This document shows positions 16,321 through 51,061 of a DNA stretch of 58,474 nt, piece by piece (positions within the stretch are counted from its first letter, which is position 1; each line of letters starts with the position of its first letter). The notes under the pieces are model-generated. The model saw only the letters and a program-made list of their open reading frames with translations, was not told the origin of the DNA and did no database searches. The position numbers and the translations under genes were made by a program. The DNA is from Chiloscyllium plagiosum (Eukaryota): the NCBI RefSeq assembly GCF_004010195.1, contig NC_057726.1, positions 61,968,519-62,026,992 on the forward strand, written 5' to 3'.

Positions 16321-17334
16321 ATAAGAATAAAATAAAGGCCATCCAGAGATGCACACATTCCATGACTGCATTAAAAACAAGTGTTGTAACATTAAAATGA
16401 CAGTTGGTTTGATTAGAATCCAATGCAAAATGCTCTATTATAACTCTGTAGAACTTTGTCAGCAGACAACCAATATTCTCTATACTGTTGACTAGAATCT
16501 AGATAACATCAATACGTGATGAACTGGCCATATTCGTTCCAACGAGTCATAGTCTTCTCTGAGTTCTGAAATCAATGTCTACTCTTCATGATGCTTGATT
16601 TCGAGTTGTCACTCAAGTTGTCCTTGTCAAAATCTTTACTATGCCTTCTTTTTTATGTTTCCTCCCAGTCTTCCAGGATGGTTGATGTCATGCTCCCTTA
16701 CACAAGATAATCATAGTTCAGAGCTCGTGTGGCAAGAGTCGTGTGAACAGGAGATATCCACGTGCCTATAACCTGTTAGCAGTCACATGTTGTCCAACTT
16801 TGCAACCACAGAGGTCGAATACCTTTTAGGATTGGACATTTGGCTCGTCAGCAGCCCAGCTTTACTTCTTCCTTTCATCGCAAGCTGATTGGCTGTTTAT
16901 GTAAAGTTAGCATAAATTTCCATTTTGCTTGGAGCTTCAACTGTTAGCCACGGATTCTGTCTCACCGGAAGGAATGGGAAGCGAATATGCAGGTACTACT
17001 TGGTGTGAAAGATCGCGCCTGTACCTCTGATCCATTGGCAAATAACCTTAATCTTGTGCATCAAGGTAACTGGCGACTCTACTGTGGTAAACAGTTCTTC
17101 CCTTTTCACACTAACAAAACCCTGTGTATTTTGTACACTTCAATTATATCAGTCCTGAATCTCTTCTGTTCGAAAGAAAACGAATCTAGCTTATCTAAAC
17201 CTTGCTCATAATTGACCTTTTTAAAAGCTATGGCAATATTCATGGAAAAGTCCTCTGTAATCCTTCTATAACTATTTGCTTTCTGTGATATGGTGACCGT
17301 ATCCAACGAAAGACTGCATCCAATGATGGGCAGA

Positions 17335-17740
17335 CCAGGGGTGCATACTCAGCCTCCTACTGTGCTCACTGTATACCCATGACTGCGTTGTCAAATATCA
17401 GACTAATGTCATTTACAAGTTCGCTGATGACATCTGCAGAGTCGGTCGAATCTTAGATGGCGAAGAAAGAGACTATGGAAGGGAAGTGGAAGACCTGGAA
17501 AAATGGTGCACTCAGAGCAACCTAGCTCTTAATGCCGGCAAAACCAAGGAGCTCATCATTGACGTTCGGTGGGGTGTTATTCATGTCTTCATACACATTA
17601 ACAGAACAGAAGTGGAACGAGTGGAGAGTGTCAAACTCCTGGGAGTGGTTATCAATAACAAACTTTCTAGGTGCACCCACGACAGCATTCTGTCTGAATG
17701 TATCACTACATGGTATGGCATCCGTACCATTCAAGATCGG
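17335..17740 (+). mobile_element. Non-LTR RT fragment (Rex1/Babar- or L2-like)
   Basis: KFADD followed by WCTQSNLALNAGKTKELIID...VERVESVKLLGV. Confidence 0.7.
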
Positions 17741-17741
17741 A

Positions 17742-18872
17742 GTTAAAAATCACACAACACCAGGTTATAGTCCAACAGGTTTAATTGGAAGCACACTAGC
17801 TTTCGGAGCATCGTTCCTTCATCAGGTGGTAGTGGAGGGCTCAATCCTAACACATAGAATTTAGCAAAACTTTACAGTGTGATGTAACTGAAATTATACA
17901 TTGAAACATTGATTGTCTGTTAAGCATTTCATCTGTTAGAATACCATGGTAGTTTCACTTCTTTCATATGTAATTCACAAAACCTTCTTTAAAAAAGTTG
18001 CATTCTCAGGTTAGCTGTTAACAATGGTGGTAGCTAGACAATATGTTGAAGGTGTTGGCCCCCTGTGTTCTCTGTCTATGCCATGATGTTTAGATTGATT
18101 CATGCAGTTTTTGAGCTCAGAGTTCTACATGAATGCGTGCAGATTTTGAGCAAAGTACAATGTAACCCTGCAAGTACAAATTCACCCCACAAAATATATG
18201 TGTGCATGTGCGCCTTTGTATGTCTGTGTGTGTCAGTCTGTCTGGGTTGAGGGTTGTGAGTGTGAGAAAGTGTCTGTGTGTGTGTATAGTGAGTGCAGAG
18301 TGTCTTAAGTCTGTGAGTGGGTGCATGTGTGAGTATGGGAGTGTGTGTCTGTAAGGGCATGTGTGGGTATCCGTGTGTATATGTGTATAGGAATGCCTGT
18401 GTGTATGTGAGAGAGAGAGAGTGTGTAGGAGTATCTGTGTGTGTGTATAGTGCAATGGTGGTTACCTGTAATGTGAGATGAGCCCAAGGTCCTGGTTAAA
18501 GCCCTCCCTATGGGTACCGAACTTAGCTATGATCCTCTGCTCGGCCACTTTTCGCTGCTGCCTGCCCCGAAGTCCGCCTTGAAGGATGGTCACCCGAAGG
18601 TCCGAGGTCGAATGTCCTGGACAACTGAAGTGTTCCACAACAGGGAGGAACACTCTTGTCTGTTGATTGTTGTGTGGTGCCCATTCATCTGTTGTCGTAG
18701 CCTTTGCTCGGTTTCCCCAGTGTACCATGCCTCCGGGCATCCTTGCCTGCAACGTATAAGATAGACAACGTTGGCTAAACCACATGAGTACCTGCATTGT
18801 ACAAGGTGGGAGGTGTCCCCACGCGTAATAGTGGTATCTATGTCCACACTATGACACGTCTTGCAGCGCCTC
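17742..18872 (-). mobile_element. Penelope-like element 3' part with GIY-YIG endonuclease and a (TG)n-rich tract (~18200-18445)
   Basis: ANVVYLIRCRQGCPEAWYTGETEQRLRQQMNGH is a GIY-YIG signature; RKVAEQRIIAKFGTHREGFN. Confidence 0.88.
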
Positions 18873-20382
18873 CCATTGGATATTTTTATCTCGCCACTCT
18901 GCAGGCACCCTGCATCTATCCCTGATGAAGGGCTTTTGCCCGAAACGTCAATTTTCTTGCTCCTCGGATGCTGCCTGACCTGCTGTGCTTTTCCAGCACC
19001 ACTCTGATCTAGACTCTCACTTTATATTCCCTATAATCGCAAGGCTCGTCTGTAGTTCTCATTCTTTCCTCTCAACGAGTCCGCTCACCCATCAAACCAC
19101 TGGCTGCTGTCTTATCACAAGTTCGAAATTCAGCAGCATATTTTTCCAACTTGTTTCTGCGTGCTAGGCCAATTGTTGAATGCCAAAACTATTATCAGCA
19201 TTTTCATCATTATGCGATTTTAAACTCGGATAGACTTCCACTGTTTCAGCAGCAAGGCGCAATTGATGATTTGTGAATTCTGGAAATGATTTCTCACAAT
19301 GCTCCTTCTAATTGAACGTTTGCACGCCAATGTTCTCTTTGAGATTCCGTCCTAGCAATCTGAGAAAACAGAACTTTTTTTTCTACATGCAGGAGTATAG
19401 AACCTACCTCGCAGACATCCTGCCGATTTCTGTGCTGCTTTTACAGCGTCAGACTGCAGCCTGACTGCGAGCCCAAAGTGAAGACGCAATGTAAGTATCT
19501 GGGGTACCGAAGCCATTGCTTTCAGTCTCTGTCTCAAAATTGCTTTCCATTGTCGATAACAAAACCTGATATTCAGCAAAACTGTCTACTTTTAACTTTG
19601 TAACATAGCTGTCTAGCGTTTACTGTTCGAATGCACTTGCGGCGAATCTTTTATTCTGTGCCTTCTGTTAATCTGAGGGTAGGTGACAGTCTGTTGATGA
19701 CATCCTTTCCTCTCAACGAGTCATCTCACCCATCAACCGGGTGTCTTCTGACTTACATGTGTTCCCTGTTCGTGAACGTCTTGAAATTAAAGTCTTCATT
19801 AATTTTCTGCGTTTTGACTTATTCTATTGCAGTCTCTTTGATCTCTTCCATCTACAGAATTGTCGAAGTTTTCTGATCTCCTCACATCTTGGCTTCTTGA
19901 ACATCCTAACCGGTGACGCTGCCATTTGCGCCCGTGCCTTCAATTGACAAAAGTCTCAGTTGGATAATTTCCTCCCTAAATCTCAACATGTCTTTATTTC
20001 ATTTTCTCCCTTTAAGATACTCCTTGAAAGTGACTGATTTTGGTGAACTTGGATCACCTATGATGCTTCCTTTATGTTTAGGTGTCAAAAATTGCTGTAT
20101 AACGTCCTGAAGAAGCGACATAAAGAAAAACGGGTGTTATGAAAGATTTGCTTGGAATACAGGGATTACGTTTGACGTCCTGCTGTTTTTTTGCTGGTAT
20201 TGCAGTATATTTTCAAGGGCTATCCAAAAGCAAAACTTTGCAATCCAAAGCTACTTCATAAATAACAGGCGCAGGATGTTAACGTCATTGCGACGAGTTT
20301 TATGTTAAATAATCAGCAAGCCCCTTTGACAAAGACAAACACGGTCACTGCAGACAGACATCCGTTGAAACTTTAGGCCGGA

Positions 20383-20443
20383 ATGATGTCGAATGCCAAG
20401 TTTCTTTTAATTCTCCTGACGCTCCTGGACCTCACTACTGCAG
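20383..20443 (+). CDS. Gene B exon 1, signal peptide (MMSNAKFLLILLTLLDLTTA)
   Basis: Classical n/h/c signal peptide; phase-1 donor G|gtatct. Confidence 0.88.
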
Positions 20444-20617: not shown

Positions 20618-20938
20618 ATGCACCAGATTCCTCTGTGAGCATCCGTCAATCTCCCCCAAAGGCAGTTATATCAAAGGGTTCAGACATCATTCTCTACTGC
20701 ATTTTGCCCCTTTCCCATGATAATTCAGAGTTCGAGGTACGTTGGTGGAAACGGGGTGAGAATAAATTTCTGCAACCAGGAGTAGATAAAAGGAAACATA
20801 TTGGTGTCATATCTAAAGGATCTGCTAACCTGGATCTGCGAAACGCAATGCTCCAGGACTCAGGAATCTACCACTGTACAGTAATCCGTCAGGGAGCATT
20901 TTATGGAAATGGAACAGGAACTAATCTAACTGTCTGCA
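20618..20938 (+). CDS. Gene B exon 2, Ig V-set domain with J-like G strand
   Basis: Acceptor cttccag|; IRQSP, LYC, WWK, DSGIYHC and GNGTGTNLTV; donor A|gtaagt; 321 nt, same length as in gene A. Confidence 0.93.
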
Positions 20939-21634: not shown

Positions 21635-21940
21635 TTTCTCCAGCTCCAATAAAGATTTACACAAAGCCACGCAAGGACAATTCATCGAAGTCTCTGACTC
21701 TTGTGTGTCAGACGAGTGCGTTCCATCCGGGCGATTTTACTCTCGTTTGGTATAAAAATGGCACCGCAATCTCACCGGCGATAATTAAAAAACAGAACGC
21801 TGAAGGACTGTATCAAGCTTTCAGTTCTTTGGAAGAGGCGCAACCTGAGCGGACCGAAGTTGTCTACATCTGTTTGGTAATACACATCTCCCTTCGGACT
21901 CCCGCCATTGCTATCCACACTGTGACAAATACCTACTCAG
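21635..21940 (+). CDS. Gene B exon 3, Ig C1-set domain
   Basis: Acceptor tttgcag|; LTLVCQTSAFHP...WYKNG...GLYQAFSSL...YICLVIHISL; donor G|gtatga. Confidence 0.93.
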
Positions 21941-23994: not shown

Positions 23995-26683
23995 TCATGT
24001 ATCAGAAATAAGGTGGGTGAACTTAAGGTGTGGATCGGTACCTGGGACTATGATGTTGTGGCCATCACGGAAACATGGATAGAAGAGGGACAGGAATGGT
24101 TGTTGGAGGTTCCTGGTTACAGATGTTTCAGTAAGATTAGGGAGGGTGGTAAAAAAGGAGGGGTTGACGTTGCTAATTAGAAATTGTATAACGGCTGCTG
24201 AAAGGCAGTTCTTGCCTTTGGAGGTAGTATGGGCTGAAGTCAGAAACAGGAAAGGAGCAGTCACCTTGTTGGGTGTTTACTATAGGCCCCCCAATAGCAG
24301 CAGAGATGTGGAGAAACAGATTGGGAAACAAATTTTGGAAAGGTGCAGAAGCCACAGGATAGTAGTCATGGGCGATTTCAATTTCCAAATATTGATTGGA
24401 AGCTCTTTAGATCAAGTAGATTGGATGGGGTGGTGTTTGTGCAGTGTGTACAGGAAGCTTTTCGAACTCAGTATGTAGATTGTCCGACCAGAGGGGATGC
24501 CATATTCGATTTGGCACTTGGTAATGAACCGGGACAAGTGATGGGCTTGTTAATGGGTGAGCATTTTGGTGATGGTCACCACAATTCTGTGACTTTCACC
24601 TTGGTTATGGAGAGAGACAGGTGCGTGCAACAGGGTAGGTTTTACAATTGGGGGAAGGGTAAATCTGATGCTGTAAGACAGGATCTGAGGAGCATATGTT
24701 GGGAGCATAGGCTGTCAGGGAAGGATGTCGTGGAAATGTGGAACTTTTTCAAGGAACAGATACGACGTGTCCTTGATATGTATGTACCTGTCAGGCAGGA
24801 AAGAGATGGTCGTGTGAGGGAACCTTGGTTGACGAGGGAGGTTGAATGACTTGTAAAGAGGAAGAAGGAGGCTTACATAAGGTTGAGGAAACAAGGTTCA
24901 AACAGAGTGTTGGAGGGATACAGGAGCTGAAGACAGGGATTAGGAGAGCTAAGAGAGGGCATGAAAAATCTTTGGTGGATAGGATCACGGATAACCCCAA
25001 GGCATTTTATGCGTATATGAGAAACATGAGAATGACGAGAACGAGGGTAGGTCAGATCAAGGACAGTAGTGGCAGACTGTGTATTGAGTCGGAAGAGATA
25101 GGAGAGGTCTTGAATGAGTACTTTTCTTCAGTATTTACGAACGAGAGGGACCGTATTGTTGAAGAGGAGAGTGTGAAANNNNNNNNNNNNNNNNNNNNNN
25201 NNNNNNNNNNNNNNNNNNNNNNNNNNNNNNNNNNNNNNNNNNNNNNNNNNNNNNNNNNNNNNNNNNNNNNNNNNNNNNNNNNNNNNNNNNNNNNNNNNNN
25301 NNNNNNNNNNNNNNNNNNNNNNNNNNNNNNNNNNNNNNNNNNNNNNNNNNNNNNNNNNNNNNNNNNNNNNNNNNNNNNNNNNNNNNNNNNNNNNNNNNNN
25401 NNNNNNNNNNNNNNNNNNNNNNNNNNNNNNNNNNNNNNNNNNNNNNNNNNNNNNNNNNNNNNNNNNNNNNNNNNNNNNNNNNNNNNNNNNNNNNNNNNNN
25501 NNNNNNNNNNNNNNNNNNNNNNNNNNNNNNNNNNNNNNNNNNNNNNNNNNNNNNNNNNNNNNNNNNNNNNNNNNNNNNNNNNNNNNNNNNNNNNNNNNNN
25601 NNNNNNNNNNNNNNNNNNNNNNNNNNNNNNNNNNNNNNNNNNNNNNNNNNNNNNNNNNNNNNNNNNNNNNNNNNNNNNNNNNNNNNNNNNNNNNNNNNNN
25701 NNNNNNNNNNNNNNNNNNNNNNNNNNNNNNNNNNNNNNNNNNNNNNNNNNNNNNNNNNNNNNNNNNNNNNNNNNGAGGGAGTCGGAGGGTGGGTCAGTAA
25801 ATTTGCAGATGATACGAAGATTGGTGGAGTTGTGGATAGTGAGGAGGGCTGTTGTCGGCTGCAAAGGGACTTAGATATGATGCAGAGCTGGGCTGAGGAG
25901 TGGCAGATGGAGTTCAACCCTGTCAAGTGTGAGGTTGACATTTTGGAAAGACAAATAAGAATGCGGAATACAGGGTTGACGGTAGGGTTCTTAGTAAGGT
26001 GGAGGAGCAGAGCGATCTTGGGGTCTATGTTCATAGATCTTTGAAAGTTGCCACTCAGGTGGATAGAGCTTGTAAGAAGGCCTATGGTGTATTAGCGTTC
26101 ATTAGCAGAGGGATTGAATTCAAGAGTCGTGAAGTGATGTTGCAGCTATACAGGACCTTGGTTCGGCCACATTTGGAGTACTGTGTGCAGTTCTGGTCGC
26201 CTCACTTTATGAATGATGTGGAAGCTTTGGAGGGGATGCAGAGAAGATTTACCAGGATGTTGCCTGGAATGGAGAATAGGTCGTACGAGGATAGGTTGAG
26301 AGTGCTAGGCCTTTTCTCATTAGAACGGTGAAAGATGAGGGGTGACTTGATAGAGGTGTATAAGATGATCAGGGGAATAGATAGAGTAGACAGTCAGAAA
26401 CTTTTTCCCCGGGTACAACAGAGTGTTACAAGGGGACATAAATTTAAGGTGAAGGGTGGAAGGTATAGGGGGGATGTCAGGGGTAGGTTCTTTACCCAGA
26501 GAGTGGTGGGGGCATGGAATGCGCTGCCTGTGGGAGTAGCAGAGTCAGAATCATTGGCGACCTTTAAGCGGCAATTGGATAGGTACATGGATGGGTGCTT
26601 AAGCTAGGACAAATGTTCGGCACAACATCGTGGGCCGAAGGGCCTGTTCTGTGCTATATTGTTCTATGTTCTATGTTCTATGT
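23995..26683 (+). mobile_element. Relatively young CR1 LINE ORF2 (APE + RT) with (TTCTATG)n tail, in gene B intron 3; contains assembly gap 25179-25774
   Basis: DVVAITETW, GVYYRPP, VMGDFN, KFADD and RPHLEYCVQFWSP; a few frameshifts and stops; heptamer tail at ~26660-26683. Confidence 0.95.
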
Positions 26684-26880
26684 CATTCTTTGCGGGATGT
26701 AGTTAGTTCGGACACTAGATCTATAAAGTTAAATTGTTTTAAAAAATGGTAATCTGAGAATATGTTGCATAGCTGCATACATACGAGCAGTACTTGAACC
26801 AGCAAATTATCTCGAGATTTCTTTTTCGGCAACGACAGGTGTAAATAACAAATTAAACACTAATCGTTTTGATCTTGCAG

Positions 26881-26991
26881 ATCTCAATGATAAATATCAG
26901 TTTATCTGGATGTCTGGATATGTGATGGGTGGACTGGCAATTCTGGTATTCATCATCGTTGTTGGGATCAAAATCTGTTCAAAAAATGACG
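26881..26991 (+). CDS. Gene B exon 4, uncharged transmembrane (DLNDKYQFIWMSGYVMGGLAILVFIIVVGIKICSKND)
   Basis: Acceptor tcttgcag|, donor G|gtaggt, phase 1-1; homologous to the gene A TM exon. Confidence 0.9.
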
Positions 26992-28049
26992 GTAGGTATG
27001 ACCTTAATCCTTTGATAATTATATAGATCATCAGAAAGGTCGGAAGAGTGTCTGAAGGGTATCATGTGGGAATGGCGATTGGTTGATATGCAAAGGAAAC
27101 CGTTTGCTGGAGCTCGGGACTAAATTTAGAATTCATAATGGAAGGATCGTCACAAAATGAAAATGAAAAATCTGGTTATTGGATATTACGAACGGAAATT
27201 TCCACATTCTAAGTATGGGAATCTTAATTTGATATGATCTTTCAGTTTGTCTAGTTCGTCATCTTCTGTTATGTTCTTCCAACTAATCATGGAGGGATTC
27301 AGATTTCCGATGGAATTCTGAATCTGTAAGCTTCCTAACGAACTGCACATGAGATTGCCATATGCTCACCTGGAATTGCGAAATGTGGTCTTAAATACAA
27401 AATCCAAATGCTTAATTAAAGATCTGAGGAAGCTGCGAGTCAGGAAGGCATTGTTATCTTTGTGAGAAAAATTTGCCCGACATCATTAGCGCCATTTTTG
27501 GCATCCTTTTAACCTATTGGTTCTTTACAGTTACAGACTTGGAACCACGAGGTCACAGTATTGCAGTGCTCATGCTACTGGACGAGTAATCCAAAGTTCT
27601 AGATCTATGATTCATTGCAGATTGGGAAGACTTTTTAATCCACTTAAAACTTAGATAAACTTTTGGCCTCAGTAAGAGATTATTAATTTTAGGGGCTGTC
27701 ACAAAACGCCAAGTAAAAGATCATCTCAACTGTTTAGCAGATACTGAACTATGTGTAACGCCAGTCAGAAGGCCCTTTGGTAATGGGCCTTCAAAATGGT
27801 GATGCAGGCCGCGTGGTTGTGTTTTGATAAGTGCGACTAAAGATCGACAGTAAGTATCTTTGCCAGTGCTCTCCCTGTCTTGAGAATGAATTATGCAATA
27901 ATTTTATCTACCATTCTTTCCATGTGCTTACTATTTTTATTAAATCCACAAAACATGGCATAGCCCTCTCCTTTGCATACGAAAGATCTTATATACGGTG
28001 TGTGCCCACGTAGCTCATTACCTTAGCAATGGAAAGCCAGTCTTATTTA

Positions 28050-28680
28050 TTTATTCATTCATTTTGTGCGATGTAGGCATCTCTGGCTGACCAACATTTA
28101 TTGCTTGTCCCTAGATGGCCTTGAGAAAGTGGTGTCCACCTGCTGTGGGCTGACCCATTATGACATTAGGGAGGGAATTCATTCGGGAGGACCCAGCAAC
28201 AGTGAATAAATACCGATATATTTCCAAGTCAGGGTGGTGAGTGGCTTGGAGGGGAACTACAGGGGTTGGTGTTCCCATCTATCAGATGCCCTTATCCTTC
28301 TAGATTGAAGTGGACATGGGTTTGGAAGGTGCTGTCTAAAGATGTTTGGTGAATTTCTGCAGTGCATATTGTAGATGGTACACACTGCTGCTATGAGCAT
28401 AGGAGGTGCAGGGAGTGGATGCTTGTGGATACAATGCCAATCAAGCAGGCTACTTTCTTCTGGGTTTTGTCAAGCTTCTTGAGTGTTGTTGGGGCTGCTC
28501 TCATCTGGCTAGTGGGGAGCATTTCATCGCACTCCTGATTTATGCCTTGGCGATGAGGGCAGACGTCGGGAGTCAATAGGTGAGTTAGTCATCGCAGTAT
28601 TCCTAGCCTCTGACCTGCTCTTGGAGCCATTGTATTTATCTAGTGAGTTCAGTTGAGCGTTCGTTAGACCAAAGTTTGCA
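28050..28680 (-). mobile_element. LINE 3' fragment (same family as ~16000-16320 and ~36760-37350)
   Basis: Shared tttggaaggtgct...gaatttctgcagtgc motifs. Confidence 0.6.
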
Positions 28681-29065
28681 CTTCATTGGTGACCAAAATT
28701 GGTCAGAGCATTCAATGGTCTGAACTGAACGACGAGCACATTCTATATTTTGTTTGGTTCCTCATATCTTTTATGATACTGCATTACACCTGAGTTTTAC
28801 ATCTTGTAGTTTACCCATTGCTGATCTGCATTGAATTTCCATATTTCTAGCATGGTCTACTAAATGCTAGATAACTTACAAATTCTAAATTTCCAATCTG
28901 TTTGAATGGAGTGTATGGAATCAGTTTTACTCATATTTAATGGAGCTCCCAGCTCGCTATATATTTCATGTATATAATCATGTAAAAGTCTACCTTTCGA
29001 TGGAAATACTTCTGAATACACAAATTGTAATCAGTGAACCTAATTCAATTGCACTATTTTGCCAG

Positions 29066-29109
29066 GTAAAAAAGAAAATGTAACAACTGTGAATTCTTAT
29101 GATGAGCAG
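29066..29109 (+). CDS. Gene B exon 5, cytoplasmic (GKKENVTTVNSYDEQ)
   Basis: Acceptor ttttgccag|, strong donor CAG|gtaagc; 44 nt, phase 1 to 0, exactly what is needed to join the TM exon to the ITIM exon. Confidence 0.82.
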
Positions 29110-29619
29110 GTAAGCTGATGTTATTTGTCCCAAGAAATGGATTCCAATTTATATATACCTTGTTAAAATGGAAATGTTTCATCACAGGCTTTCGCAACAA
29201 GTACTTGCTTATCGTTGATATGATGTTCAAAGTCATTTGAAATTTGAGTAAGATAGCTGAGTGATGAGGAAACGATTGGCAACTTTAACATTGTGAAGCT
29301 CTGCAATAAGGAGACCAACCCTGGCCAAGGGTTAATTTTGCAGCATTTGGTAAATGACTAAAATACTGAAACTGCCTCTCGTTTAAAAATATCTATGACA
29401 CTATTGTGGTGAAAATCTATAAATGAAATATCAGTTACAATAGGCACCGTATTACTGTCCTCATCATCAACAGACGTTTACACATACAGTATTAACCGTT
29501 GCTTCTGCATCAGTTGATAGCCCAGGCACCTTTATGTTGACTGTCTAAGCATCAGTCTCTAACTGTTAAAATCAATTAACTAACCAGCTGACAAACCGCC
29601 TCCTTCTTGTCTCATGCAG

Positions 29620-29742
29620 CCGGTTGCGACCCAAAACGTGATTTATACTGCAGTAGATTTGAAAAACACCAATAAAACTTCAAGAGCTCGAGATGACCAA
29701 GACGCGACAGCGTACGCTCAAGTGAAGCTCAGAAGTTCATAA
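29620..29742 (+). CDS. Gene B exon 6, cytoplasmic tail with ITIM (VIYTAV) and ITSM (TAYAQV)
   Basis: Acceptor ccttcttgtctcatgcag|; PVATQNVIYTAVDLKNTNKTSRARDDQDATAYAQVKLRSS*; spliced CDS is 966 nt = 321 aa + stop. Confidence 0.9.
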   Translation, partial: PVATQNVIYTAVDLKNTNKTSRARDDQDATAYAQVKLRSS

Positions 29743-30367
29743 AGGAAATGTTGATGCCCCGTGAAAAACCGATAATCATACTACAGCAGAGTGTTTGAAG
29801 ATTCTGTGTCTTTCATAGTGCATTGTCTCTAAAGCTTCATGTAATTCTGATGAATGCATTGAGCTGGACTCAGAAATTGCAAAATCAATGAATCAACAAT
29901 ACTTTCAAACGTCGGTTGTTCATGTAAAGCAGGGGACTGGTCTAATAAGGTAACATATTTGACTCCAGAATTCTCTGGATTTGAGAAATCCGAACAAACT
30001 ACAGAGAGACAAAAAAACTAAGGAAGCATAGAATTTGTCGAGAAAATCCAAAGCAGTCAAGACAGTTTACAGAGAATCAGTAACTGAAGGGCGCTGCAAT
30101 CTTGAGTGCACAAAACCGTTGTTCTTGTTTCACAAACCGTGACTTGTTTCATATTATTCCATTTGCGATGGAATTGACACCTGACGTGCTATGAGTGAGC
30201 CCGGGATCCGCACTGACAGTTTAGCTCTTTTAAAATGAAGGCATAAATTGTCCCCCTGCGTGTATCCAATTATTGAGATGTAGGACATTTGAACGCTATA
30301 GAATGTAAAACAGCCATTGCGGTTTTAAATTATTTTGTAATTATTAGTCAGCTATATACATACTTAC

Positions 30368-30373
30368 AATAAA
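30368..30373 (+). other. Candidate polyadenylation signal of gene B
   Basis: AATAAA ~630 nt after the stop. Confidence 0.45.
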
Positions 30374-33300
30374 AATTGCTTTCAATATAAATCTGCATTG
30401 AAACATATTTACAAAGTCGTACTATTATATACTTACTGTCATGCTGCGTCTACATTTTATCATGCACACGAATAGATTCCTTCCTTCTAGTTCCAAATCG
30501 ACCTTAATGCAACGTGTATTTTCTTTCAGAGAACGCAAGAACAGAAAATTGTATTTGAACTTCATAAATTATGTCACAGCGTCCGATTTTCATTCAGGGC
30601 GATCGTCCTGGTTTAGAAATAAAGCATTTCCCTCCATAATCTGAGTGAAGCTTATTTCTCAATGACACGTACACAGCTGAGCTCTGGGTTGGCTTGCCAT
30701 TTCATTTGGAAACATTATTGCTAGTCTTTGCGTATTCGAGTATAATCTTGTGGCTTCCATAATACGCAACAGGCCGTTAACTTCAACTAAGAGAAGGGTT
30801 CTGAAAGAAATAATGAGAAGTTATTCGGGGTATTATAAATTAATGAATGAGAAAACGTGCTAAACTAATTACATCCTCGTTGTAGAAAATAAAACACATC
30901 AAATTGTTACTTTAATGTTTCATGGTCTGTCAATTAATGCATGTAGGTTTTTGTTGTGAACCATTTCTTCTATTACTGAGTCTGGTGCCAGAAATGCTAT
31001 AAAGCAGGGTTCAAAATATTGAGTTGAGTCTAAGTTGGGAGTAACTTGACTAATTTATATGACCAGGCATTACTGCAGCTAGTGAGGGGAGGAAATTAGC
31101 CAACTAGGCCAGAAGATTAAATATATTTAGGGCCTGATTTTTAACTTTCTGTGGATGAATAGATTCTGTGACAGCTTAAGTTTGACTCTAACTTGAAAAA
31201 AAAAGCAAATTATGTAAATAGTTGGCTAATGCTTTAGGTACGGTTATCACTGGTTCGTTATTGAATCTGTGTAATACCGAAAAAGGAATATATGTGCAAT
31301 ACCAAGTATTTTAAAGACTAAGACCACGACAGCATTGAGGTAAAAACAATGACTGCAGATGCTGGAAACCAGATTCTGGATCAGTTGTGCTGGAAGAGCA
31401 CAGCAGTTCAGGCATAGAACCCAGCTATTCTTTTGGTAGACATTGCGCCATTGCTTGTATCCACGTGAAACACAGTGTTAAATAATTTGTCCTGCAACTT
31501 ATCTTCACAATATTTGATATTATCTCTGCCATGCAATTACTTTCGACTAAGAAATGTATTTTTAAGCAATATAATCAGCATACGGATTCACGTTCACACA
31601 CACCCGTGGCATGTAGGAAGAGTGCGGTAATTCTTTACCATGAAATTTCTGAAATTGACAACTACTGCCACTGTTCATGCGACAACTGTAATATTTAAAC
31701 AATTGATTGCAATCTTGAAAACAATTATGTGCTTATGCATTAATCTTCTCAGCGCCATTATGGTGACAATGATAGCTTGGGCGTTGTTGGAACTGCACTG
31801 ATTCAGGCAATGACTTGTACCTTGCAGATGGTGAACATGCTTTGGGAAGTCCGGTGGCAAGTTACTTCTGTCAGGATTTCTAGATGTGACCCGCTCTTGA
31901 AGCTATTACAATTATATGTTAGCCCCAATTCACTTTTTGGTAACTCCCATGAAGTTGGTGGTGGGGAGTGCAGTAATGCCAACGCCATTGAATATTAAGC
32001 AGACGGGGAAGCAGAGTGATTAGATTGTCTCTTCTCCACGATGGTCTTATTGAAGATGTTTTTTTGCTTGGTATTTAAGTGCATGAATGTTACTTGCCAG
32101 TTTTCAGGCCAAGCCTGGATATCGTCCTGGTCTCGTTGCATATGTGCATGGAATGCTATTTGCCTATTGCAGTATCTGAATGTTTCCTTTAGTGCAGCAT
32201 TTATGGCTAGGAATCAATTATAGTCCAAGTAAAGTTTAGTATGATGTTACCTTTGCAATTTTTAAATACTGTACACCTCGAACAAAAATGGACTCGAATT
32301 TGGGGAGACTATTTTTTGCATTTTACAGTGAATACTATTACAGAATAATGCATGTAGGCAGAAAGGTAATTTCAACAGTCAGCAATTTAAACCAAACACT
32401 TAAGTTTTTCACTTTTAACTTTAAAGATGAACCTTTTCAGGCATTCTTTCTACTTTATACAGCTTTGATTAACCGTTAATCCCGCAATGAATGTGTTCAT
32501 CTGCAGGATTTCACATTCGCCATATTCCACTTTTCAGTAGATGATAGATTCACACTTATGGAAATTCCTGAATTCTCGTGTACCAATGACTTATATAGCT
32601 TGTAAGTAAAAGCAATAGAGAATCAGGCAGCTATTGCATCAATTATTTCCATGTCAAATCTCCTACTTTTATCATTGTGCTTTGTTTCTATGCCTCAACC
32701 TTATTATTTTGTGATCAATTGTAGCGAATATTTCCGTTCGAAATTCCATGCAATCACACCTGGGAATTCTTGCCTTGTCGCTTCCCTCTGCTATTGTTTC
32801 AAGTAATATCTAGTTTCATCGAAGAGAAATCAAGTGCACTGTATTTCAAAAAAAAGTCTGCCGGTTGCTCTTGATAAACTTGTGCTTGTAGAAGTGTTTG
32901 GAAATTTTTGTCGAGTTTGTGGCCGGGCCCGTCAAATATAAATAAACAATTTTGTCACTACATATTTAAAAATAAATGTTGCCACATTCGTTAAACATTC
33001 TTTTGAAAACTAGGTGACAGGTTCTTGAGAAGTGGAAAAGATAATGAGTAAACGACTAACTAAAGTTTCCATCTTATTTTGTTCCATAATAAGCATTGCA
33101 AAATGTGAAGGCACGTTTGTGGGTTGTCGAGGCTAAGTCAAGAATATGACTTGATAACTCATTTCTGGTGAGCCAGTGCTAATTTTAACTTACATGCTAA
33201 TTGCAACACTCTGAAAATATAATGTTTGCAAAGCGATGGCTATTCCACCTCACAGTTCAATGCAATCATATAAGCAGATGTTTATTTTAAACAGCAATTA

Positions 33301-39094: not shown

Positions 39095-39149
39095 ATGGCT
39101 GTGAAGGCTGTGTTTCAGAGTATACAGCTCATAAAGATTATTTTCATTG
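39095..39149 (+). CDS. Gene C exon 1, leader (MAVKAVFQSIQLIKIIFI)
   Basis: 55 nt as in gene A; phase-1 donor G|gtatgt; weaker hydrophobic core. Confidence 0.7.
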
Positions 39150-39242
39150 GTATGTTCCAGAATTCGCTCTTTGTCTTTATGTTTGTCTCATGTTATCTCT
39201 CTAAATCTTCCTCAGTGTTTTGCAAACACTTTTCTTTTACAG

Positions 39243-39557
39243 TTGCTGCTGATGTTCCTGTTGAAGTGTCCCAGATCCCCGAACGTATCTATGCCACAAC
39301 TGGCACAAACCTCACATTCTATTGCACGTTTTCTGTTTTTCAAGACAAACAGGCGATCATTTATTGGTGGAAACTTGGTGAAAATGAATTCATTCATTTT
39401 GGATCAGACAACAGGAAACGACTTTTCATCGAGAAAGGAAGAGCCTCATTACAACTCCTGAATATCAGTGTCCAAGACTCTGGAGTCTATTATTGCAGAC
39501 TGACATGCCCGGGAAAAAGAGCCGCAAATGGAAGTGGATCAACACTTGTCGTCCGTG
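39243..39557 (+). CDS. Gene C exon 2, Ig V-set domain with J-like G strand
   Basis: Acceptor ttttcttttacag|; VSQIP, FYC, WWK, ASLQL, DSGVYYC and ANGSGSTLVV; donor G|gtaaga. Confidence 0.93.
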
Positions 39558-39789
39558 GTAAGAGATGGTCAATGGAGTAGACTGAAAATTCTCTATCTTA
39601 TTACAATTAGAAAAATGTAACTGGCAACACGTTTTTCTCTTCCTTGGGCGTTCCATTAAATTAGAAAATAAATGTTTCAAAAGAAATATTTAATTATGAA
39701 TCAGATGATATCCCTCTACGTCGAGGTTCCACGATCTTGATTTTCTAACATTGTTTCGATTATTTCATGCATGAAAACTCGCACAGACC

Positions 39790-40090
39790 AACTAATCTGC
39801 ACATCTTTGCACTATTGGAGGAAACCAAAACACCCAGAGTAAACCCATACTGACACGGGCGAACGTGCAAACTCCACATAGTCAACTAACCGTGGCTAAT
39901 GCTTTGGTTTCTTCCCATAGCCTAAGATTTGCAGGATATGTGGATTGACAATGCTAAATTATCCAGTAAAGTCCAGGGATATGCAGGCTAGTAGGATAGG
40001 GTGGAGGACTAGGTCTGGGTAGTGTGCTCTTTGGATGGTCGGTGCACCCTTGATGGACCGAATGGCCTCTGTTTACACGGTAGACATTAT
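39790..40090. mobile_element. Two partial HE1-like SINE copies in opposite orientation
   Basis: gaggaaacc...tgcaaactccaca (reverse) followed by atgctaaatt...ggaccgaatggcct (forward); both match 45969-46308. Confidence 0.65.
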
Positions 40091-41575
40091 TCTAAGCGTT
40101 TCCATGTCATTCAAGTATGGATATTGAGTGGAAAATTACTTGAACATTGTTCAGTATAGGAAACATTTGACAGTATTAAACTTGTTTTTGCTGACTGTCT
40201 CAACAAGGACAGTCAAGCTAAAAGTCGTTTAAATGCATTTGAAATCTAATTTCAATCAAAACATGATGTCCAAATTTGCTGCATGTGATCAGCTTTGAAT
40301 GTTGTGTGCCAGTTTGTCTGCGGTAAAAAAAAGAAAGACTTCGATGTTGCAAATTCTTTTCCACATCATTACGTATTTTAAAGTGTTAGTTAACTATAGC
40401 TGACATAATGGCAAAATGCTTTAAAAGCAGAAATCTGAACCTACCAGATAATTAGTGATAATGCTTGGTGGATATATATTGACCAAAAAATTGGGACAAT
40501 TACAATTAACTTGTCTGATCAATACTAGAGGATATTTTACTTTCATTGAAGAGGTCAGAATGGGTTTTGGTGTATTCCCCTGGATGGACGGCCTGTTTCC
40601 CATTGCAGCGCTCTCTCCGTACAATTCTAAAGGATTGGCCTTGATTGTTCCTCCAAATCCATTGAGTAGAGCTTGGAGCTGACACCCGTCTTGGAATGAA
40701 GCGTGTTTCCACGTGCTATGAGAACATTGTGCGTTCCAGCTCGAAGAATCAAACATTCGGATGTTTGGTCGCATTTGTAGTTTTCAATCGATTTGGTCAG
40801 TTTTTGGTGGGCTAACGCAAGACGTTGAATCACCTCAAATCCCTTCAGAAGCAGAAACAAAACTTAATAACGAATGCAATTACTTGTTTCCTGAATTTTG
40901 TAAACTCTATTTGCCTCAGTTTTAATCTCCGATATATCTCCCACTCTGAAGTAACTCGTGAAATGTACGAACATCTCAGTCCCAGACTGAGACTATAGAG
41001 TTCTCAATCATGTTATGCCTCCCATGTTTATTTCAGCAGCAAGATGGATTGTGGCTTTGAGGCGACAATTCCTCTGCTCACTGTAAGTAGCCACACAGAT
41101 TGAATACATTCTGGAAGTTTCCTCTGGTCACATATTGATTGCGTATTAAAGTTTGCCAAAAGGAAAGCTATCTCATATTCACTACCGTGGCATCCTGAAA
41201 TTCTTTGAACAATCTTTAATTTGTTTTCTCTCTCATCAGGTGATGCAGGAAAGATAAATTTGGTGATCCAGGGAAATTTGAAATAAATTTAGAGATCCAA
41301 CCCCACTTGCAGGTTGCTATAATCCGAATATGCTATCTGGAAGGCCATTAGAAGCATGTTCAGTAGGAACTCCAAAGGGCCGTGGATCAATGCTTGAACC
41401 TGGTCATTTTCACACCGAAAGGAAAGAACAGATACGAGAACATTATTGCATAATACTTCCAAGAAAGCAGCGTGGGCAGGATAGACCAAAATAGCAGGTT
41501 TGCTGTAGCATTCTATAATTATATAGAAGATCATAATTGATAGACAAAGCATTCACTTCACCATTACCATTCATG

Positions 41576-41609
41576 CTATTTGCTGTTATTTGCTGTTATT
41601 TGCTGTTAT
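41576..41609 (+). repeat. Tandem 10-mer (tatttgctgt) x3
   Basis: Seen directly. Confidence 0.8.
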
Positions 41610-41696
41610 AGTCTATCCAGAATAATTGAAAAGGGACGCCATTCTAATTTGCAGACCAGACGAGATTATTAACTTCCTTGTTCGTTGTTTCACCAG

Positions 41697-42011
41697 CTTC
41701 TCCAACTCCAGTGAGGATTGTTTCCCGTCCCTCTGAAAGTACTGCGCACAGTTCTTTGTCTTTGGTATGTGAAATGGATTTGGTTTTCCTGGACGGTCTG
41801 ACTATCACTTGGTACAAAAATAATCGAAGCATTGAGAATGGGATAAATACGACCACGAAGCAACTCAGTGGAGCAGGGCTGTATAAAGTTTCAAGCTATT
41901 TGGAAGAAGCACGGCCTATCCAAGGAAGAACTGTTTTTGTCTGTCTGATGTCTCAAGCGACCCTACAGATTCCAGCCATGGCCATTTACTTGGTCCCTAT
42001 TTCTCGTCTAG
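41697..42011 (+). CDS. Gene C exon 3, divergent Ig C1-set domain
   Basis: Acceptor caccag|; LSLVCEMDLVFLDGLTITWYKN...GLYKVSSYL...FVCLMSQ; donor G|gtaaga; colinear with the A and B C1 exons. Confidence 0.9.
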
Positions 42012-42159
42012 GTAAGATTCTACGCTCAGCAGACGCAAAATCAAAAAGCCTCAGATATAATCTGACACAAAAGCTCAGAACGTACTTGCACAATCCAAAT
42101 TATAAGAAACCTGCAAGTGCAATATTTCTCTGCGTAAAATCTCACAACCTATGATCTGT

Positions 42160-43400
42160 AACGAGGAGGTCATGCCTGATCAACCTAATTTAATTTTGCA
42201 AAGAGGTGAAAATATATGCAGACAACGACAATGCTTTTGATACACTCTATTCCGATTTCAGCTACGTTTTGATGCAATCCCGCACGGGAAAGTGGAAGAA
42301 AGTATAGCAGATCATTGGATCCAAGGAAATTTGGCAAATTGGGTCCATAATTAGCTGACAAGCAAGGAGCAGATAGTTATGGCTGACAGGCGTTTTTCCA
42401 ATTGAAAACCTGAGTTCAATGGGGTCCCACACGGATCGGTGTGAGGCCCCTGCAGTTTCTGTTTATGTAAATGATTTAAACTTTAATGTATGAGGGTTGA
42501 TCAATAAGTTCACAGATAATACGAAAAAGACGGTGGAAGGTAAATATTAAGTAGGGTTACTTTAGATTACACAAGGCTATGGACGAACTGGTCAGATGAG
42601 ATGATCAGTGAGAAGTGGAACTCAATCCAGAAAAATGCATGCTGATGTAATTGGACAGGACAGGCAAGGCAGGGAATACATTGTAAAAGGTGGGACCCTA
42701 CGAAGCATTGAGGATCAGATGGTATGCTTGTTACGCACATACACTAGCCACTTAAGTTTTAGGGCAGCGAATTGATGAATTGATTAAGAAGGCATTTGGT
42801 GTATTTGCTGTTGATAGCCAAGGCGTAAATTTAAAAACAGGGAAGGTATTCTGGAACTATATAAAATTGTTCGTTCGCCACAGCTAGTGTATGATATGCA
42901 GTTCTGGATTCCACATTATAGGAGGGATGTGATTGTACAGGAGACGATGCAGAGAAGATATACCATGATATTGCTTGGACTGCAGAGTTTCAGTTATGAG
43001 ACAGATTGGACAGACTGGGATGTTTTCTTAGAGCAAGTGAAATTGAGAAGGGACTTGACTGAGATTTATAAAATTAGGAGGGGTACGGATAGGGTAAAAG
43101 GAGGAAGAAACTGTTCCAATTAATGGAGCGATCACTGAATGGGGGTAGGGAGAGTGGGTGGAGCAAATAGATTTAAGCTAAGAAGCAGAAGGTTTAGACC
43201 AGATGTGAGGGGAAAAAAGCGTTTTCACCAGAAGGTGGGGGAAATTTGGAATTCACTGACTGTAAGTGTGGTAGAGATAGAAACCCTCATAAAATTTAAG
43301 AAGTATGTGGATATATACTGTACTTGCAAAGGCATATGAGACTTTTGGTTAAGTGCTGGAAATTGTGATTTTAATAGTTAAGTAGTTATTCCTTACTGGC
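42160..43400 (+). mobile_element. Degenerate CR1 LINE (RT + 3' end) in gene C intron 3
   Basis: ggggtcccacacggatcggtg (GVPxGSV), QFWIPHYRRDV and LRRDLTEIYKI. Confidence 0.85.
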
Positions 43401-43809
43401 ATGAACACGTAAAGCCTTCTTTTATTTTATAGATCTCAATAATTGTATGGCAACATCACATTTCATTGTCTGCTGCTGAATGAGTCGGTGCTAGGAATTA
43501 CACTGCAGTAATAACCATGGAAACTAAGCATTACCTGAGTTTGCAAAATCTGTTCAGTATAACAAGTGCTTCACCCTAGTCCTAATTTCCAGAACAGTTA
43601 GGTTCGCAATTTTTGACAGACCATATCCTCTGAACTAGTTACATCAAGACATACCTAACATAATAAAACTCCACAAAGGCATGCTTTGATAGAATTCCAC
43701 ATGATGACAAAGGGGAGTACAACTTGAAGGAATTAACTCGTGAAACATTGAAAAAAAGCTTAATTGTCATAGATAGCACCATTTCTGAAAGTGAGTATTA
43801 ATGTTGCAG

Positions 43810-43926
43810 ACGATGACAACATATTTCGCACTTACGTACGGATCTTTGCATGCGCAGGATTTGTACTGATGTTTTTGGCACTGCTGGCTATCATTAGAAT
43901 GTGGCACATATTCACTAACCACAAAG
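43810..43926 (+). CDS. Gene C exon 4, transmembrane (DDDNIFRTYVRIFACAGFVLMFLALLAIIRMWHIFTNHK)
   Basis: Acceptor gttgcag|, donor G|gtaaga, phase 1-1, hydrophobic stretch. Confidence 0.88.
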
Positions 43927-44057
43927 GTAAGATATCATACTATCATTTAACGGAAACCATTCAAAAACTAACAGAAGTTGTGAAATACAATATTGCTTTA
44001 ATATTGGTATGAGTGTAAAGGTATATTTTCTTAGTTTTTACTTCTTTTACAACCAAG

Positions 44058-44335: not shown

Positions 44336-44565
44336 AGTCGGAAGTCTGCTTTCGGGGATCTGTGTGATCAAATACACTAAGAGAAACATTTATCCAACAT
44401 TTTTATCCACGTTATAGACAGAAATTGAGTCAGTAATTTTGCTCCCATTTGCTAACCAATGGAAGAGTAGATATGTCTTACTTTGCCCTGACTGTAAATT
44501 GACATTTACTATATAGTACTTGCGGAATCATTTCTTGCAATAACATGTGGAATTTTGTGTTTTAG

Positions 44566-51060: not shown

Positions 51061-51061
51061 T

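What the first reader, a model, noticed from the sequence alone, without database searches (positions are those of the whole stretch)
29620..29742. Gene B is a complete inhibitory receptor with an ITIM + ITSM tail invisible to the ORF track
VIYTAV (29638-29655) fits V/I/L/SxYxxL/V and TAYAQV (29707-29724) fits TxYxxV/I, with the tyrosines 23 residues apart. The TM is uncharged. ITIM followed by ITSM is the arrangement in PD-1 and CD33-related Siglecs that recruits SHP-1/SHP-2. Inference: a checkpoint-like receptor with a V-C1 ectodomain.
Basis: partly seen in the sequence, partly recalled or inferred. Interest (0 to 1): 0.8.

Follow-up and report, generated by a model that had tools for sequence, protein, structure and literature searches.

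The report
Shark SIRP-like inhibitory receptor tail exon
A bamboo shark immune-receptor gene that the public annotation cuts short most likely continues through a membrane anchor to a short tail carrying two tyrosine "off-switch" motifs, making it an ordinary but so far unannotated member of a shark receptor family that resembles mammalian SIRP-alpha.

Summary
VIYTAV (29638-29655) and TAYAQV (29707-29724) are there, in one frame, with the tyrosines 23 residues apart and a stop at 29740-29742.

It is not chance. An ITIM followed by an ITSM 15-35 residues on occurs twice in all six frames of the window: here and in the tail of paralogue gene C. A profile of tail modules from other cartilaginous fishes picks out these two exons (E 9e-8 and 6e-9).

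The window is Chiloscyllium plagiosum. Gene B's RefSeq model (XP_043563364.1, 245 aa) stops in the intron after the C1 exon.

A coherent six-exon model exists, but the TM exon cannot join the tail exon directly. A 44-nt exon (29066-29109) is needed. It matches gene C's annotated structure and a C. punctatum model.

The tail is shortened. A decayed further module lies in frame behind the stop.

Transcription evidence is one 159-nt contig, and no splice junction was seen.

The closest named relative is SIRP-alpha, not PD-1 or Siglecs. SIRP orthology is unproven. The scan noted the same kind of gene at two other places in this genome. Verdict: a new member of a known kind, of modest interest.

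The parts
20383..20443 (+). Exon 1: ATG and signal peptide (MMSNAKFLLILLTLLDLTTA), donor CAG|gtatct, ends with 1 base of an open codon
   Evidence: Identical to the N-terminus of RefSeq XP_043563364.1 (P0001).
20618..20938 (+). Exon 2: V-set domain with J-like end (NGTGTNLTV), phase 1-1
   Evidence: Pfam V-set 1.6e-10. 100% to P0001 residues 21-127. AlphaFold model pLDDT 88 with a V-type fold.
21635..21940 (+). Exon 3: C1-set domain (FHP in the BC loop, 13 residues between Cys and Trp, LVIH after the F-strand Cys), phase 1-1
   Evidence: Pfam C1-set 2.2e-9. PDB hits UrIg2 4.5e-11, SIRP-gamma 3e-9, SIRP-alpha 1.2e-8. The signature criteria come from PMC2785349 (passages) and were read on the sequence.
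26881..26991 (+). Exon 4: stalk, uncharged transmembrane helix and stop-transfer (…FIWMSGYVMGGLAILVFIIVVGIKICSKND), phase 1-1
   Evidence: 78% identical to the TM part of the C. punctatum model P0003. Paralogue A has Arg (AGA) where B has Gly (GGA).
29066..29109 (+). Exon 5: 44-nt cytoplasmic exon (G)KKENVTTVNSYDEQ, acceptor ttttgccag|, donor CAG|gtaagc. It changes the phase from 1 to 0.
   Evidence: One of 94 phase-compatible AG..GT segments between the TM and tail exons. It is the only one that matches the C. punctatum model P0003 (GKEEKVTTVNSYDEQ). Four of the 94 are 44 nt long, the length of gene C's annotated exon 44566-44609.
29620..29742 (+). Exon 6 coding part: cytoplasmic tail PVATQNVIYTAVDLKNTNKTSRARDDQDATAYAQVKLRSS plus stop. 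ITIM at 29638-29655, ITSM at 29707-29724.
   Evidence: hmmsearch E 9.2e-8 against a profile of tail modules of other species. tblastn to the tails of P0012 and P0053: 43% and 39% identity, E about 1e-7. One 159-nt contig of run X7 lies on 29631-29789.
29926..30057 (+). Decayed later tail module in the 3' flank, in the same frame as the tail exon (KAGDWSNKVTYLTPEFSGFEKSEQTTERQKN*GSIEF…). About 60 codons with 7 stops separate it from the tail's stop, and its second tyrosine is lost.
   Evidence: tblastn with the P0042 tail, 38% over 45 residues, E 3.8e-4, and one P0135 alignment spanning 29632-30018. An overlapping piece in another frame gives hmmsearch E 0.0097.
30491..30613 (+). Rival terminal exon used by the C. 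punctatum gene model instead of the ITIM exon (open here too, no tyrosine motif)
   Evidence: P0003 residues 241-281 match at 85%. Sequence read. No X7 contig lies there.
27531..27587 (+). Read from the TM exon's phase it gives VTDLEPRGHSIAVLMLLDE and then a stop.
   Evidence: Sequence (segments from 27531). No homology support and no read support.

Best explanation
Gene B is a six-exon gene of the whitespotted bamboo shark. It encodes a type I membrane receptor of a cartilaginous-fish multigene family with an antigen-receptor-like ectodomain: one V domain with a J-like end, then one C1 domain. The order of parts is leader, V, C1, an uncharged transmembrane exon, a 44-nt cytoplasmic exon, and a last exon holding an ITIM (VIYTAV) and an ITSM (TAYAQV) 23 residues apart. 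Shown here: the domains, the in-frame exon chain with canonical splice sites, homology of the tail exon to the first two-tyrosine module of relatives' tails, and the absence of these exons from the public model. Inferred from what is known of ITIM/ITSM receptors such as SIRP-alpha: after ligand binding, Src-family kinases phosphorylate both tyrosines. The pair then docks the tandem SH2 domains of SHP-1/SHP-2 (the ITSM possibly SAP-type adaptors), which damps activation. Gene B would act as the inhibitory partner of neighbouring gene A, which has Arg in its TM. The tail is a shortened version of a 2-3 module ancestral tail.
For: Organism and truncated public model: the V exon is 100% identical to XP_043563364.1 (C. 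plagiosum, 245 aa), which reads through the C1 donor into the intron. Domains: V-set 1.6e-10 and C1-set 2.2e-9. The C1 signatures FHP, 13 residues Cys-Trp and xVxH are all present (one search read against PMC2785349). Exon chain: 61+321+306+111+44+123 = 966 nt in frame, and every boundary is AG|..|GT. Exon 5: same 44-nt length and phase as gene C's exon, which RefSeq uses in XP model P0183, and 13 of 15 residues identical to the C. punctatum model P0003. Tail homology: a profile of 19 modules from 11 proteins of other species ranks gene C's tail (6.3e-9) and gene B's tail (9.2e-8) first among 3036 six-frame peptides. The Tyr-Tyr spacing of 23 equals that of P0012's first module and of gene C. 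Family context: of 34 fetched relatives with tails of 40 aa or more, 27 carry an ITIM; of 12 with shorter tails, none does (crude TM finder, isoforms included). Transcription hint: run X7 (286 million letters against a 3.85 Gb genome, PMC7677710) holds a depth-6.5 contig on 29631-29789. It runs through the stop codon unspliced, while the unique introns around it are uncovered.
Against: No splice junction was observed. X7 is only guessed to be RNA, and nothing of it lies on the TM exon or exon 5. Two single-cell RNA runs gave no reads on any exon, though only about 2 and 6 in 100 of their reads were examined. RefSeq's pipeline ended the model after C1. The C. punctatum model skips the ITIM exon for a downstream exon. 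A LINE-like insertion and an N run lie in intron 3. The tail has lost its later modules, which is also what early decay would look like. The nearest V-domain relatives in catshark and Mustelus (P0173, P0169) have Arg in the TM region and short tails. The conserved second motif in most relatives is TxYAQT, not a canonical ITSM: only 7 of 34 long tails have TxYxx[VI]. Orthologous DNA could not be fetched, so selection on the exon is untested.
Confidence: 0.68

Rival explanations
1. Gene B is on the way out or is used differently. Its mRNAs end after the C1 exon (a secreted V-C1 form, as in RefSeq), or at another 3' exon (the 27531 acceptor, or 30491-30613 as in the C. punctatum model). The ITIM/ITSM exon would then be a still-intact relic that is not part of the protein.
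For: The RefSeq model stops in intron 3. The C. punctatum model joins exon 5 to the 30491-30613 equivalent. The later tail modules are already decayed. A LINE-like insertion and an N run sit in intron 3. Other notes of this scan report decaying tails in this family (unchecked). No junction reads were seen.
Against: The tail exon keeps an open frame, a strong acceptor (a CT-rich tract and ctaac about 36 nt upstream) and both canonical motifs. The rival exons have no homology to any relative's tail. P0003 is a poor model: half of its V domain is missing and intron sequence is read before the TM. The only non-repeat X7 contig in 4.5 kb lies exactly on the tail exon and starts 11 nt inside it.
Confidence: 0.27
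2. The two motifs are a chance match in non-coding DNA.
For: Each motif is short and degenerate: 220 ITIM-pattern matches occur in the six-frame translation of the window.
Against: The ordered pair occurs only twice in 94,454 translated residues. Both lie 3' of a TM exon of paralogous genes and both have spacing 23. Profile E-value 9.2e-8 and tblastn E about 1e-7 to relatives' tails.
Confidence: 0.02
3. It is a PD-1/CD28-family or CD33-Siglec-type checkpoint receptor.
For: ITIM followed by ITSM is the tail arrangement recalled for those receptors. PD-1 is among the structural neighbours of the V model (rank 31).
Against: The second domain is C1-set. PD-1/CD28 members have a lone V domain and Siglecs have C2 domains (recalled). 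The best named relatives are SIRP-type.
Confidence: 0.03

Closest known systems
SIRP-alpha (SHPS-1, PTPNS1) and the SIRP paired-receptor family of mammals
   Same: The N-terminal V domain has a J-like GxGTxLxV end and is followed by a C1-set domain. There is a single TM and tyrosine motifs in the tail that in SIRP-alpha recruit SHP-1/SHP-2 (PMC12975943, passages). Neighbouring paralogues have a basic TM residue and a short tail, like SIRP-beta. The family profile hits SIRP-alpha over V plus C1 at E 9.4e-31. NCBI names 21 of the 52 best relatives SIRP-alpha-like or SIRP-beta-like.
   Different: Gene B has one C1 domain, not two. It has two tail tyrosines, whereas four are recalled for SIRP-alpha. 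The V model's nearest folds are IgNAR V and TCR V, with no SIRP among the listed rows. The tail search found no bony-vertebrate SIRP. Orthology, synteny and CD47 binding are untested.
Annotated cartilaginous-fish 'tyrosine-protein phosphatase non-receptor type substrate 1-like' proteins, such as gene C of this window (P0183), Callorhinchus P0042 and Pristis P0020
   Same: Same family: 37-59% identity in V, the same exon plan in gene C, and the same tail module with spacing 22-23.
   Different: Most relatives carry 2-3 modules (4-6 tyrosines), while gene B carries one. Gene B's second motif is a canonical ITSM (TAYAQV), where most relatives have TVYAQT. Gene B's full form is not in the public annotation.
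UrIg / UrIg2, non-rearranging antigen-receptor-like genes of elasmobranchs (PMC12227049, abstract and outline seen)
   Same: Non-rearranging V-C1 start. It is the best PDB hit of the C1 exon (4.5e-11) and second for the family profile (1.6e-34).
   Different: UrIg2 is V-C1-C2-C3 and forms Fc-like dimers (abstract). The paper's text holds no 'ITIM' or 'SIRP'. Gene B goes from C1 straight to a TM.
PD-1 and CD33-related Siglecs
   Same: An ITIM followed by an ITSM at about 20-25 residues, and an uncharged TM (arrangement recalled, not tested).
   Different: The ectodomain architecture differs (V only, or V plus C2), and no sequence relationship was found.

Membership tests
ITIM/ITSM inhibitory immunoreceptor (functional class) | Type I membrane protein with an Ig ectodomain and an uncharged TM | tested here: met
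   Leader, V-set, C1-set and a TM core without a charged residue.
ITIM/ITSM inhibitory immunoreceptor (functional class) | Cytoplasmic [SIVL]xYxx[IVL] and TxYxx[VI] | tested here: met
   VIYTAV and TAYAQV, 23 apart. Homologous to relatives' tails.
ITIM/ITSM inhibitory immunoreceptor (functional class) | The tail exon is part of the mature mRNA | tested here: inconclusive
   The exon chain is in frame and matches gene C's annotated plan. Only one 159-nt contig of a run guessed to be RNA lies on the exon, and no junction was seen.
ITIM/ITSM inhibitory immunoreceptor (functional class) | Tyrosine phosphorylation and SHP-1/SHP-2 (or SAP) recruitment | not testable with these tools
   Needs biochemistry.
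SIRP family | V-set domain with a joined J-like motif | tested here: met
   NGTGTNLTV fits GxGTxLxV. The J consensus and the listing of SIRP among VJ-type IgSF members come from PMC11599192 (passage). V-set call.
SIRP family | C1-set membrane-proximal domains: (F/Y)(F/Y/H)P, 13 residues between Cys and Trp, xVxH after the F-strand Cys | tested here: met
   FHP, 13 residues (QTSAFHPGDFTLV) and LVIH. Criteria from PMC2785349.
SIRP family | Three-domain V-C1-C1 ectodomain | tested here: not met
   Only one C1 exon lies between the V and TM exons. Relatives are also V-C1 (consensus).
SIRP family | Paired inhibitory and activating members in one cluster | tested here: met
   Gene A's TM has Arg where B has Gly. 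Among fetched relatives, short-tailed forms carry no ITIM.
SIRP family | Closer in sequence or fold to SIRPs than to other V-C1 proteins | tested here: inconclusive
   In the profile search of PDB, SIRP-alpha ranks 4th (9.4e-31), behind an Ig chain, UrIg2 and 'CT3'. For the V exon alone, no SIRP is in the best 60 by sequence or in the listed Foldseek rows.
SIRP family | Orthology (synteny with the SIRP locus) and CD47 binding | not tested
   The window holds only the three paralogues and repeats. Loci of other species could not be fetched.
PD-1 / CD28 family | A single V domain, no C domain | tested here: not met
   A C1-set exon is present. The family definition is recalled.
CD33-related Siglecs | V-set followed by C2-set domains | tested here: not met
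   The second domain is C1-set by Pfam and by signature. The family definition is recalled.
UrIg / UrIg2 | V-C1-C2-C3 architecture | tested here: not met
   The TM exon follows the single C1 exon. UrIg2 architecture from the PDB title and the abstract.

The most novel reading that the evidence does not exclude
The three genes of this window belong to a V(J)-C1 paired-receptor family that in this search appears only in cartilaginous fishes. It would be a sister or forerunner of SIRPs that sits as close to Ig/TCR/UrIg chains as to SIRP. Its inhibitory tails are built from repeated two-tyrosine modules. The 58-kb cluster would then catch the turnover between receptor types in the act: A is activating with a decayed tail, B is inhibitory with a tail cut down to one ITIM/ITSM module, and C has both an Arg near the TM and a tail. 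It would give a non-rearranging antigen-receptor-like family with SHP-type signalling at the base of jawed vertebrates.
Probability: 0.35. Interest if true: 0.55.

Novelty: new member of a known kind. Interest (0 to 1): 0.33.

Why it matters
It corrects a public gene model: a protein annotated as a 245-aa 'immunoglobulin superfamily member' is probably a 321-codon membrane receptor with an inhibitory tail. It also adds an inhibitory partner to a shark paired-receptor cluster. The family is named inconsistently by automatic annotation: SIRP-alpha-like, SIRP-beta-like, tapasin-related, NCR3LG1-like, Ig lambda-like and MHC class II-like. I found no paper describing it, so a curated description of the family would help comparative immunology. 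SIRPs have been argued to be related to antigen-receptor precursors (PMC2785349), and shark V-C1 receptors bear on that question. For the single gene, the result is expected rather than surprising.

Tried and rejected
Direct TM-to-tail splicing is rejected because it is out of frame. The second possible TM donor (GGTAG|gtatga) also leads to an early stop in the tail exon, by my own reading.

The 27531 acceptor and 92 other phase-compatible AG..GT segments (94) are not favoured. None matches a relative, and only 29066-29109 matches P0003.

DNA-level comparison of the three paralogues found only repeats and weak V/C1 matches, so protein-level comparison was used instead.

The Atlas search with the 40-aa tail gave best scores of 0.84 and 0.82 to unnamed clusters, below the level that counts.

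The word-indexed search with P0003 found 4 proteins. The search with the P0042 tail region found 4, all cartilaginous fish and no tetrapod SIRP. A blank here is weak evidence because the index needs shared 5-residue words.

Reads:
- The two single-cell RNA runs gave 33 reads (all on the 28210-28511 repeat) and 0 reads.
- Nothing in any run bridged an exon junction.

Literature:
- No paper was found with 'signal-regulatory protein' + elasmobranch (0 hits), 'non-receptor type substrate 1' + shark (0 hits) or 'antigen receptor precursor' + ITIM (0 hits).
- The listings held nothing on this family, judging by titles and abstract starts only.
- 'PRARP' returned unrelated papers. I recall that family only by name and did not test it.
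- The bamboo shark genome paper's text has no 'SIRP' or 'ITIM', and nor does the UrIg2 paper's.
- Supplements were not opened, and gene lists there could name this family.

The spliced model was searched exon by exon only. The joined protein was never assembled, searched or folded.

Full report
**1. What is at the coordinates**

Reading from the acceptor tctcatgcag| at 29620 gives PVATQNVIYTAVDLKNTNKTSRARDDQDATAYAQVKLRSS and a stop at 29740-29742.

- VIYTAV lies at 29638-29655 and TAYAQV at 29707-29724.
- The stretch is not in an ORF list at the default 60-aa limit. At 20 aa it appears only as a 42-aa ATG ORF.

**2. More than chance**

I translated the whole window in six frames, giving 3036 stop-free peptides of 12 aa or more (94,454 aa).

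- The ITIM pattern occurs 220 times and the ITSM pattern 26 times.
- An ITIM followed by an ITSM 15-35 residues later occurs twice: in this exon and in the last exon of paralogue gene C (45138-45274, LTYATV…TEYAEI). Both have spacing 23.
- I built a profile from 19 two-tyrosine modules. They came from the tails of 11 proteins of other cartilaginous fishes; 13 were tried and 2 gave no module by my pattern.
- That profile ranks gene C's tail first (E 6.3e-9) and gene B's tail second (E 9.2e-8) among the 3036 peptides. The next hit is at E 0.0097.
- tblastn of relatives' tails against 26991-31200 aligns the exon at 43% identity to Callorhinchus P0012 and 39% to P0053, with E about 1e-7 for that small search space.

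**3. The gene around it**

The window holds three paralogous genes on the + strand, with V exons at about 3544, 20618 and 39245.

For gene B the exons are:

| Exon | Coordinates |
|---|---|
| Leader | 20383-20443 |
| V | 20618-20938 |
| C1 | 21635-21940 |
| TM | 26881-26991 |
| 44-nt cytoplasmic exon | 29066-29109 |
| Tail | 29620-29742 |

- All boundaries are AG|…|GT. The four middle exons start after 1 base of an open codon, as is usual for Ig-superfamily exons. The lengths add to 966 nt in frame.
- Pfam calls V-set (1.6e-10) and C1-set (2.2e-9).
- The C1 exon has all three C1 signatures listed in the SIRP-alpha structure paper (PMC2785349, passages): FHP at the BC loop, exactly 13 residues between Cys and Trp, and LVIH after the F-strand Cys.
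- The V domain ends in NGTGTNLTV, a J-like GxGTxLxV (consensus from PMC11599192, passage).
- The TM core has no charged residue. Gene A has Arg (AGA) where gene B has Gly (GGA).

I searched and folded the exons one at a time. The joined model was never assembled.

**4.

The TM exon ends with one base of an open codon, while the tail exon is read from its first base. A direct join is therefore out of frame and stops early.

Between the two exons there are 94 AG…GT segments with the right length class and no stop. One of them, 29066-29109, stands out on three grounds:

- It has a good acceptor and a CAG|gtaagc donor.
- It is 44 nt long, exactly the length of the exon that RefSeq uses in gene C (44566-44609; P0183 matches the window at 100% there and in the tail exon).
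- It encodes (G)KKENVTTVNSYDEQ, which appears as GKEEKVTTVNSYDEQ after the TM in the C. punctatum model GCC26423.1 (P0003).

**5. Organism and public annotation**

The V exon is identical to XP_043563364.1, 'immunoglobulin superfamily member [Chiloscyllium plagiosum]', 245 aa. That model runs leader, V, C1 and then reads through the C1 donor into the intron (…TNTYSGMRPTDLKVSSTICKI). The TM and tail are therefore missing from the public protein. Gene C, 15 kb downstream, is annotated in full as 'tyrosine-protein phosphatase non-receptor type substrate 1'.

**6. The family**

A profile of 15 relatives found 52 proteins at E ≤ 1e-20.

- The 51 with a name are all from chimaeras, sharks and rays.
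- Their automatic names scatter: 15 SIRP-alpha-like, 6 SIRP-beta-like, 9 tapasin-related, 4 NCR3LG1-like, 4 Ig lambda-like, 3 MHC class II-like, 1 TCR beta-like, 1 CD276, and 8 generic or uncharacterised.

Against solved structures:

- The family profile hits an Ig chain, UrIg2, 'CT3' and then SIRP-alpha (9.4e-31, V plus C1 in one stretch).
- The C1 exon alone hits UrIg2, an IgA1 heavy chain and MR1 first, then SIRP-gamma (rank 4) and SIRP-alpha (rank 6).
- The V exon alone hits antibody and TCR V regions, with no SIRP in the best 60.
- An AlphaFold model of the V exon (pLDDT 88) is nearest to IgNAR V, TCR V, NKp30, PD-1 and Ig-beta. No SIRP is among the listed rows.

So 'SIRP-like' describes the architecture and the signalling plan well, but SIRP orthology is not shown. 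Only one C1 domain is present.

**7. The tail in family context**

Relatives carry two or three modules of the form xxYxx[LV]DL…SxK…(about 20)…TxYA[QE]x, for example:

- P0042: MVYATL…TVYAQT…VTYAAL…TEYAEI
- P0020: LTYAAV…TPYAQV…LTYATV…TEYAEL

.

Gene B's exon matches the first module and then stops. About 60 codons further on, in the same frame, lies KAGDWSNKVTYLTPEFSGFEKSEQTTERQKN*GSIEF. This aligns with the later module of P0042 (38% over 45 residues, E 3.8e-4). It has seven stops before it, a Pro at the ITIM +3 position, and no second tyrosine.

Gene B's tail is therefore a cut-down version of a longer tail.

Of 34 fetched relatives with tails of 40 aa or more, 27 have an ITIM but only 7 have a canonical ITSM. 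None of the 12 short-tailed forms has an ITIM (crude TM finder; isoforms, gene C itself and the poor model P0003 are included).

**8. Expression**

One search for runs found DNA holders of one study, two single-cell poly(A) RNA runs, and small runs guessed to be RNA. Reads were laid on 26700-31200:

- The single-cell runs gave 33 reads (all on a high-copy repeat at 28210-28511) and 0 reads. Only about 2 and 6 in 100 of their reads were examined.
- Run X7 (286 million letters) covers the repeat, plus one 159-nt contig at depth 6.5 on 29631-29789. That contig starts 11 nt inside the tail exon and runs through the stop into the 3' flank, with one difference (29687 C>G, Ala to Gly by my reading of the frame).
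- The genome is about 3.85 Gb (PMC7677710, passage). A genomic library of that size would give under 0.1-fold coverage, so this contig more likely comes from RNA. That is an inference.
- No contig lay on the TM exon or exon 5, and no junction was seen.

**9. What speaks against a working inhibitory receptor**

- The RefSeq model is truncated.
- The C. punctatum model skips the ITIM exon for 30491-30613, which is also open here. That model is poor in other ways.
- A LINE-like element and an N run lie in intron 3.
- The later tail modules are lost.
- The nearest V-domain relatives in catshark and Mustelus (P0173, P0169) have Arg in the TM region and short tails.

**10. Mechanism**

Shown:

- A V-C1 ectodomain, an uncharged TM, and an in-frame 54-residue cytoplasmic part ending in ITIM-x19-ITSM.
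- Homology of that tail to a receptor family's tails.

Inferred from what is established for ITIM/ITSM receptors and stated for SIRP-alpha (PMC12975943, passages):

- Src-family kinases phosphorylate the tyrosines.
- The two phosphotyrosines bind the tandem SH2 domains of SHP-1/SHP-2.
- Signalling from co-engaged activating receptors is then damped.
- Gene A, with its TM Arg, would pair with an ITAM adaptor as SIRP-beta does with DAP12.

The ligand is unknown.

**11. Novelty**

No paper describing this family turned up in seven relevant text searches (for the recalled name PRARP returned unrelated papers). Supplements were not seen.

Relatives are already in RefSeq under SIRP-like names, and gene C of this very window is annotated with the same exon plan. 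This scan's first readers also noted SIRP-like ITIM/ITSM genes 363 kb upstream and 8.6 Mb downstream in the same genome (unchecked).

The finding is therefore a new, unannotated member of a known kind. It is a useful correction, but not surprising.

Noticed in passing
window 29926-30057 (and 29963-30028 in another frame): A decayed further two-tyrosine tail module lies behind gene B's stop codon, in frame with the tail exon. The ancestral tail therefore had more modules.
   Followed up: partly
window 39095-45274 (gene C): Gene C equals RefSeq 'tyrosine-protein phosphatase non-receptor type substrate 1 [Chiloscyllium plagiosum]' (P0183, 327 aa). Its model uses a 44-nt exon (44566-44609) and a tail exon (45138-45274) with LTYATV…TEYAEI.
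   Followed up: yes
window 30491-30613: A 41-codon open stretch without tyrosine motifs serves as the last exon in the C. punctatum model GCC26423.1 and matches here at 85%. It could be an alternative 3' exon or a prediction artefact.
   Followed up: partly
window about 24000-26650, N run 25179-25774: A LINE-like element with long open frames (reverse-transcriptase-like by eye, not scanned against Pfam) fills much of gene B's intron 3 and is interrupted by a 596-N run. This may be why the public model stops after the C1 exon.
   Followed up: no
window 28210-28660: A very high-copy repeat lies in the intron before exon 5 (summed contig depth up to 93,197 in DNA run X1 against about 15-50 beside it). 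It is also the only part hit by the single-cell RNA reads.
   Followed up: no
P0173 (Scyliorhinus canicula), P0169 (Mustelus asterias): The relatives closest to gene B's V domain in other sharks (59% and 57% identity) have Arg in the TM region and tails of 7-9 residues. In this lineage inhibitory and activating forms seem to switch between species or isoforms.
   Followed up: partly
window 29687: The X7 contig reads G where the window has C. By my reading of the frame this changes Ala to Gly, between the two motifs.
   Followed up: no
family-wide: Automatic names for one and the same cartilaginous-fish family range over SIRP-alpha-like, SIRP-beta-like, tapasin-related, NCR3LG1-like, Ig lambda-like, MHC class II-like, TCR beta-like and CD276.
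   Followed up: yes
window 46000-58474 and 8000-19000: The long open frames outside the three receptor genes look like retroelement fragments. No other host gene was evident. They were judged by eye and not scanned.
   Followed up: no
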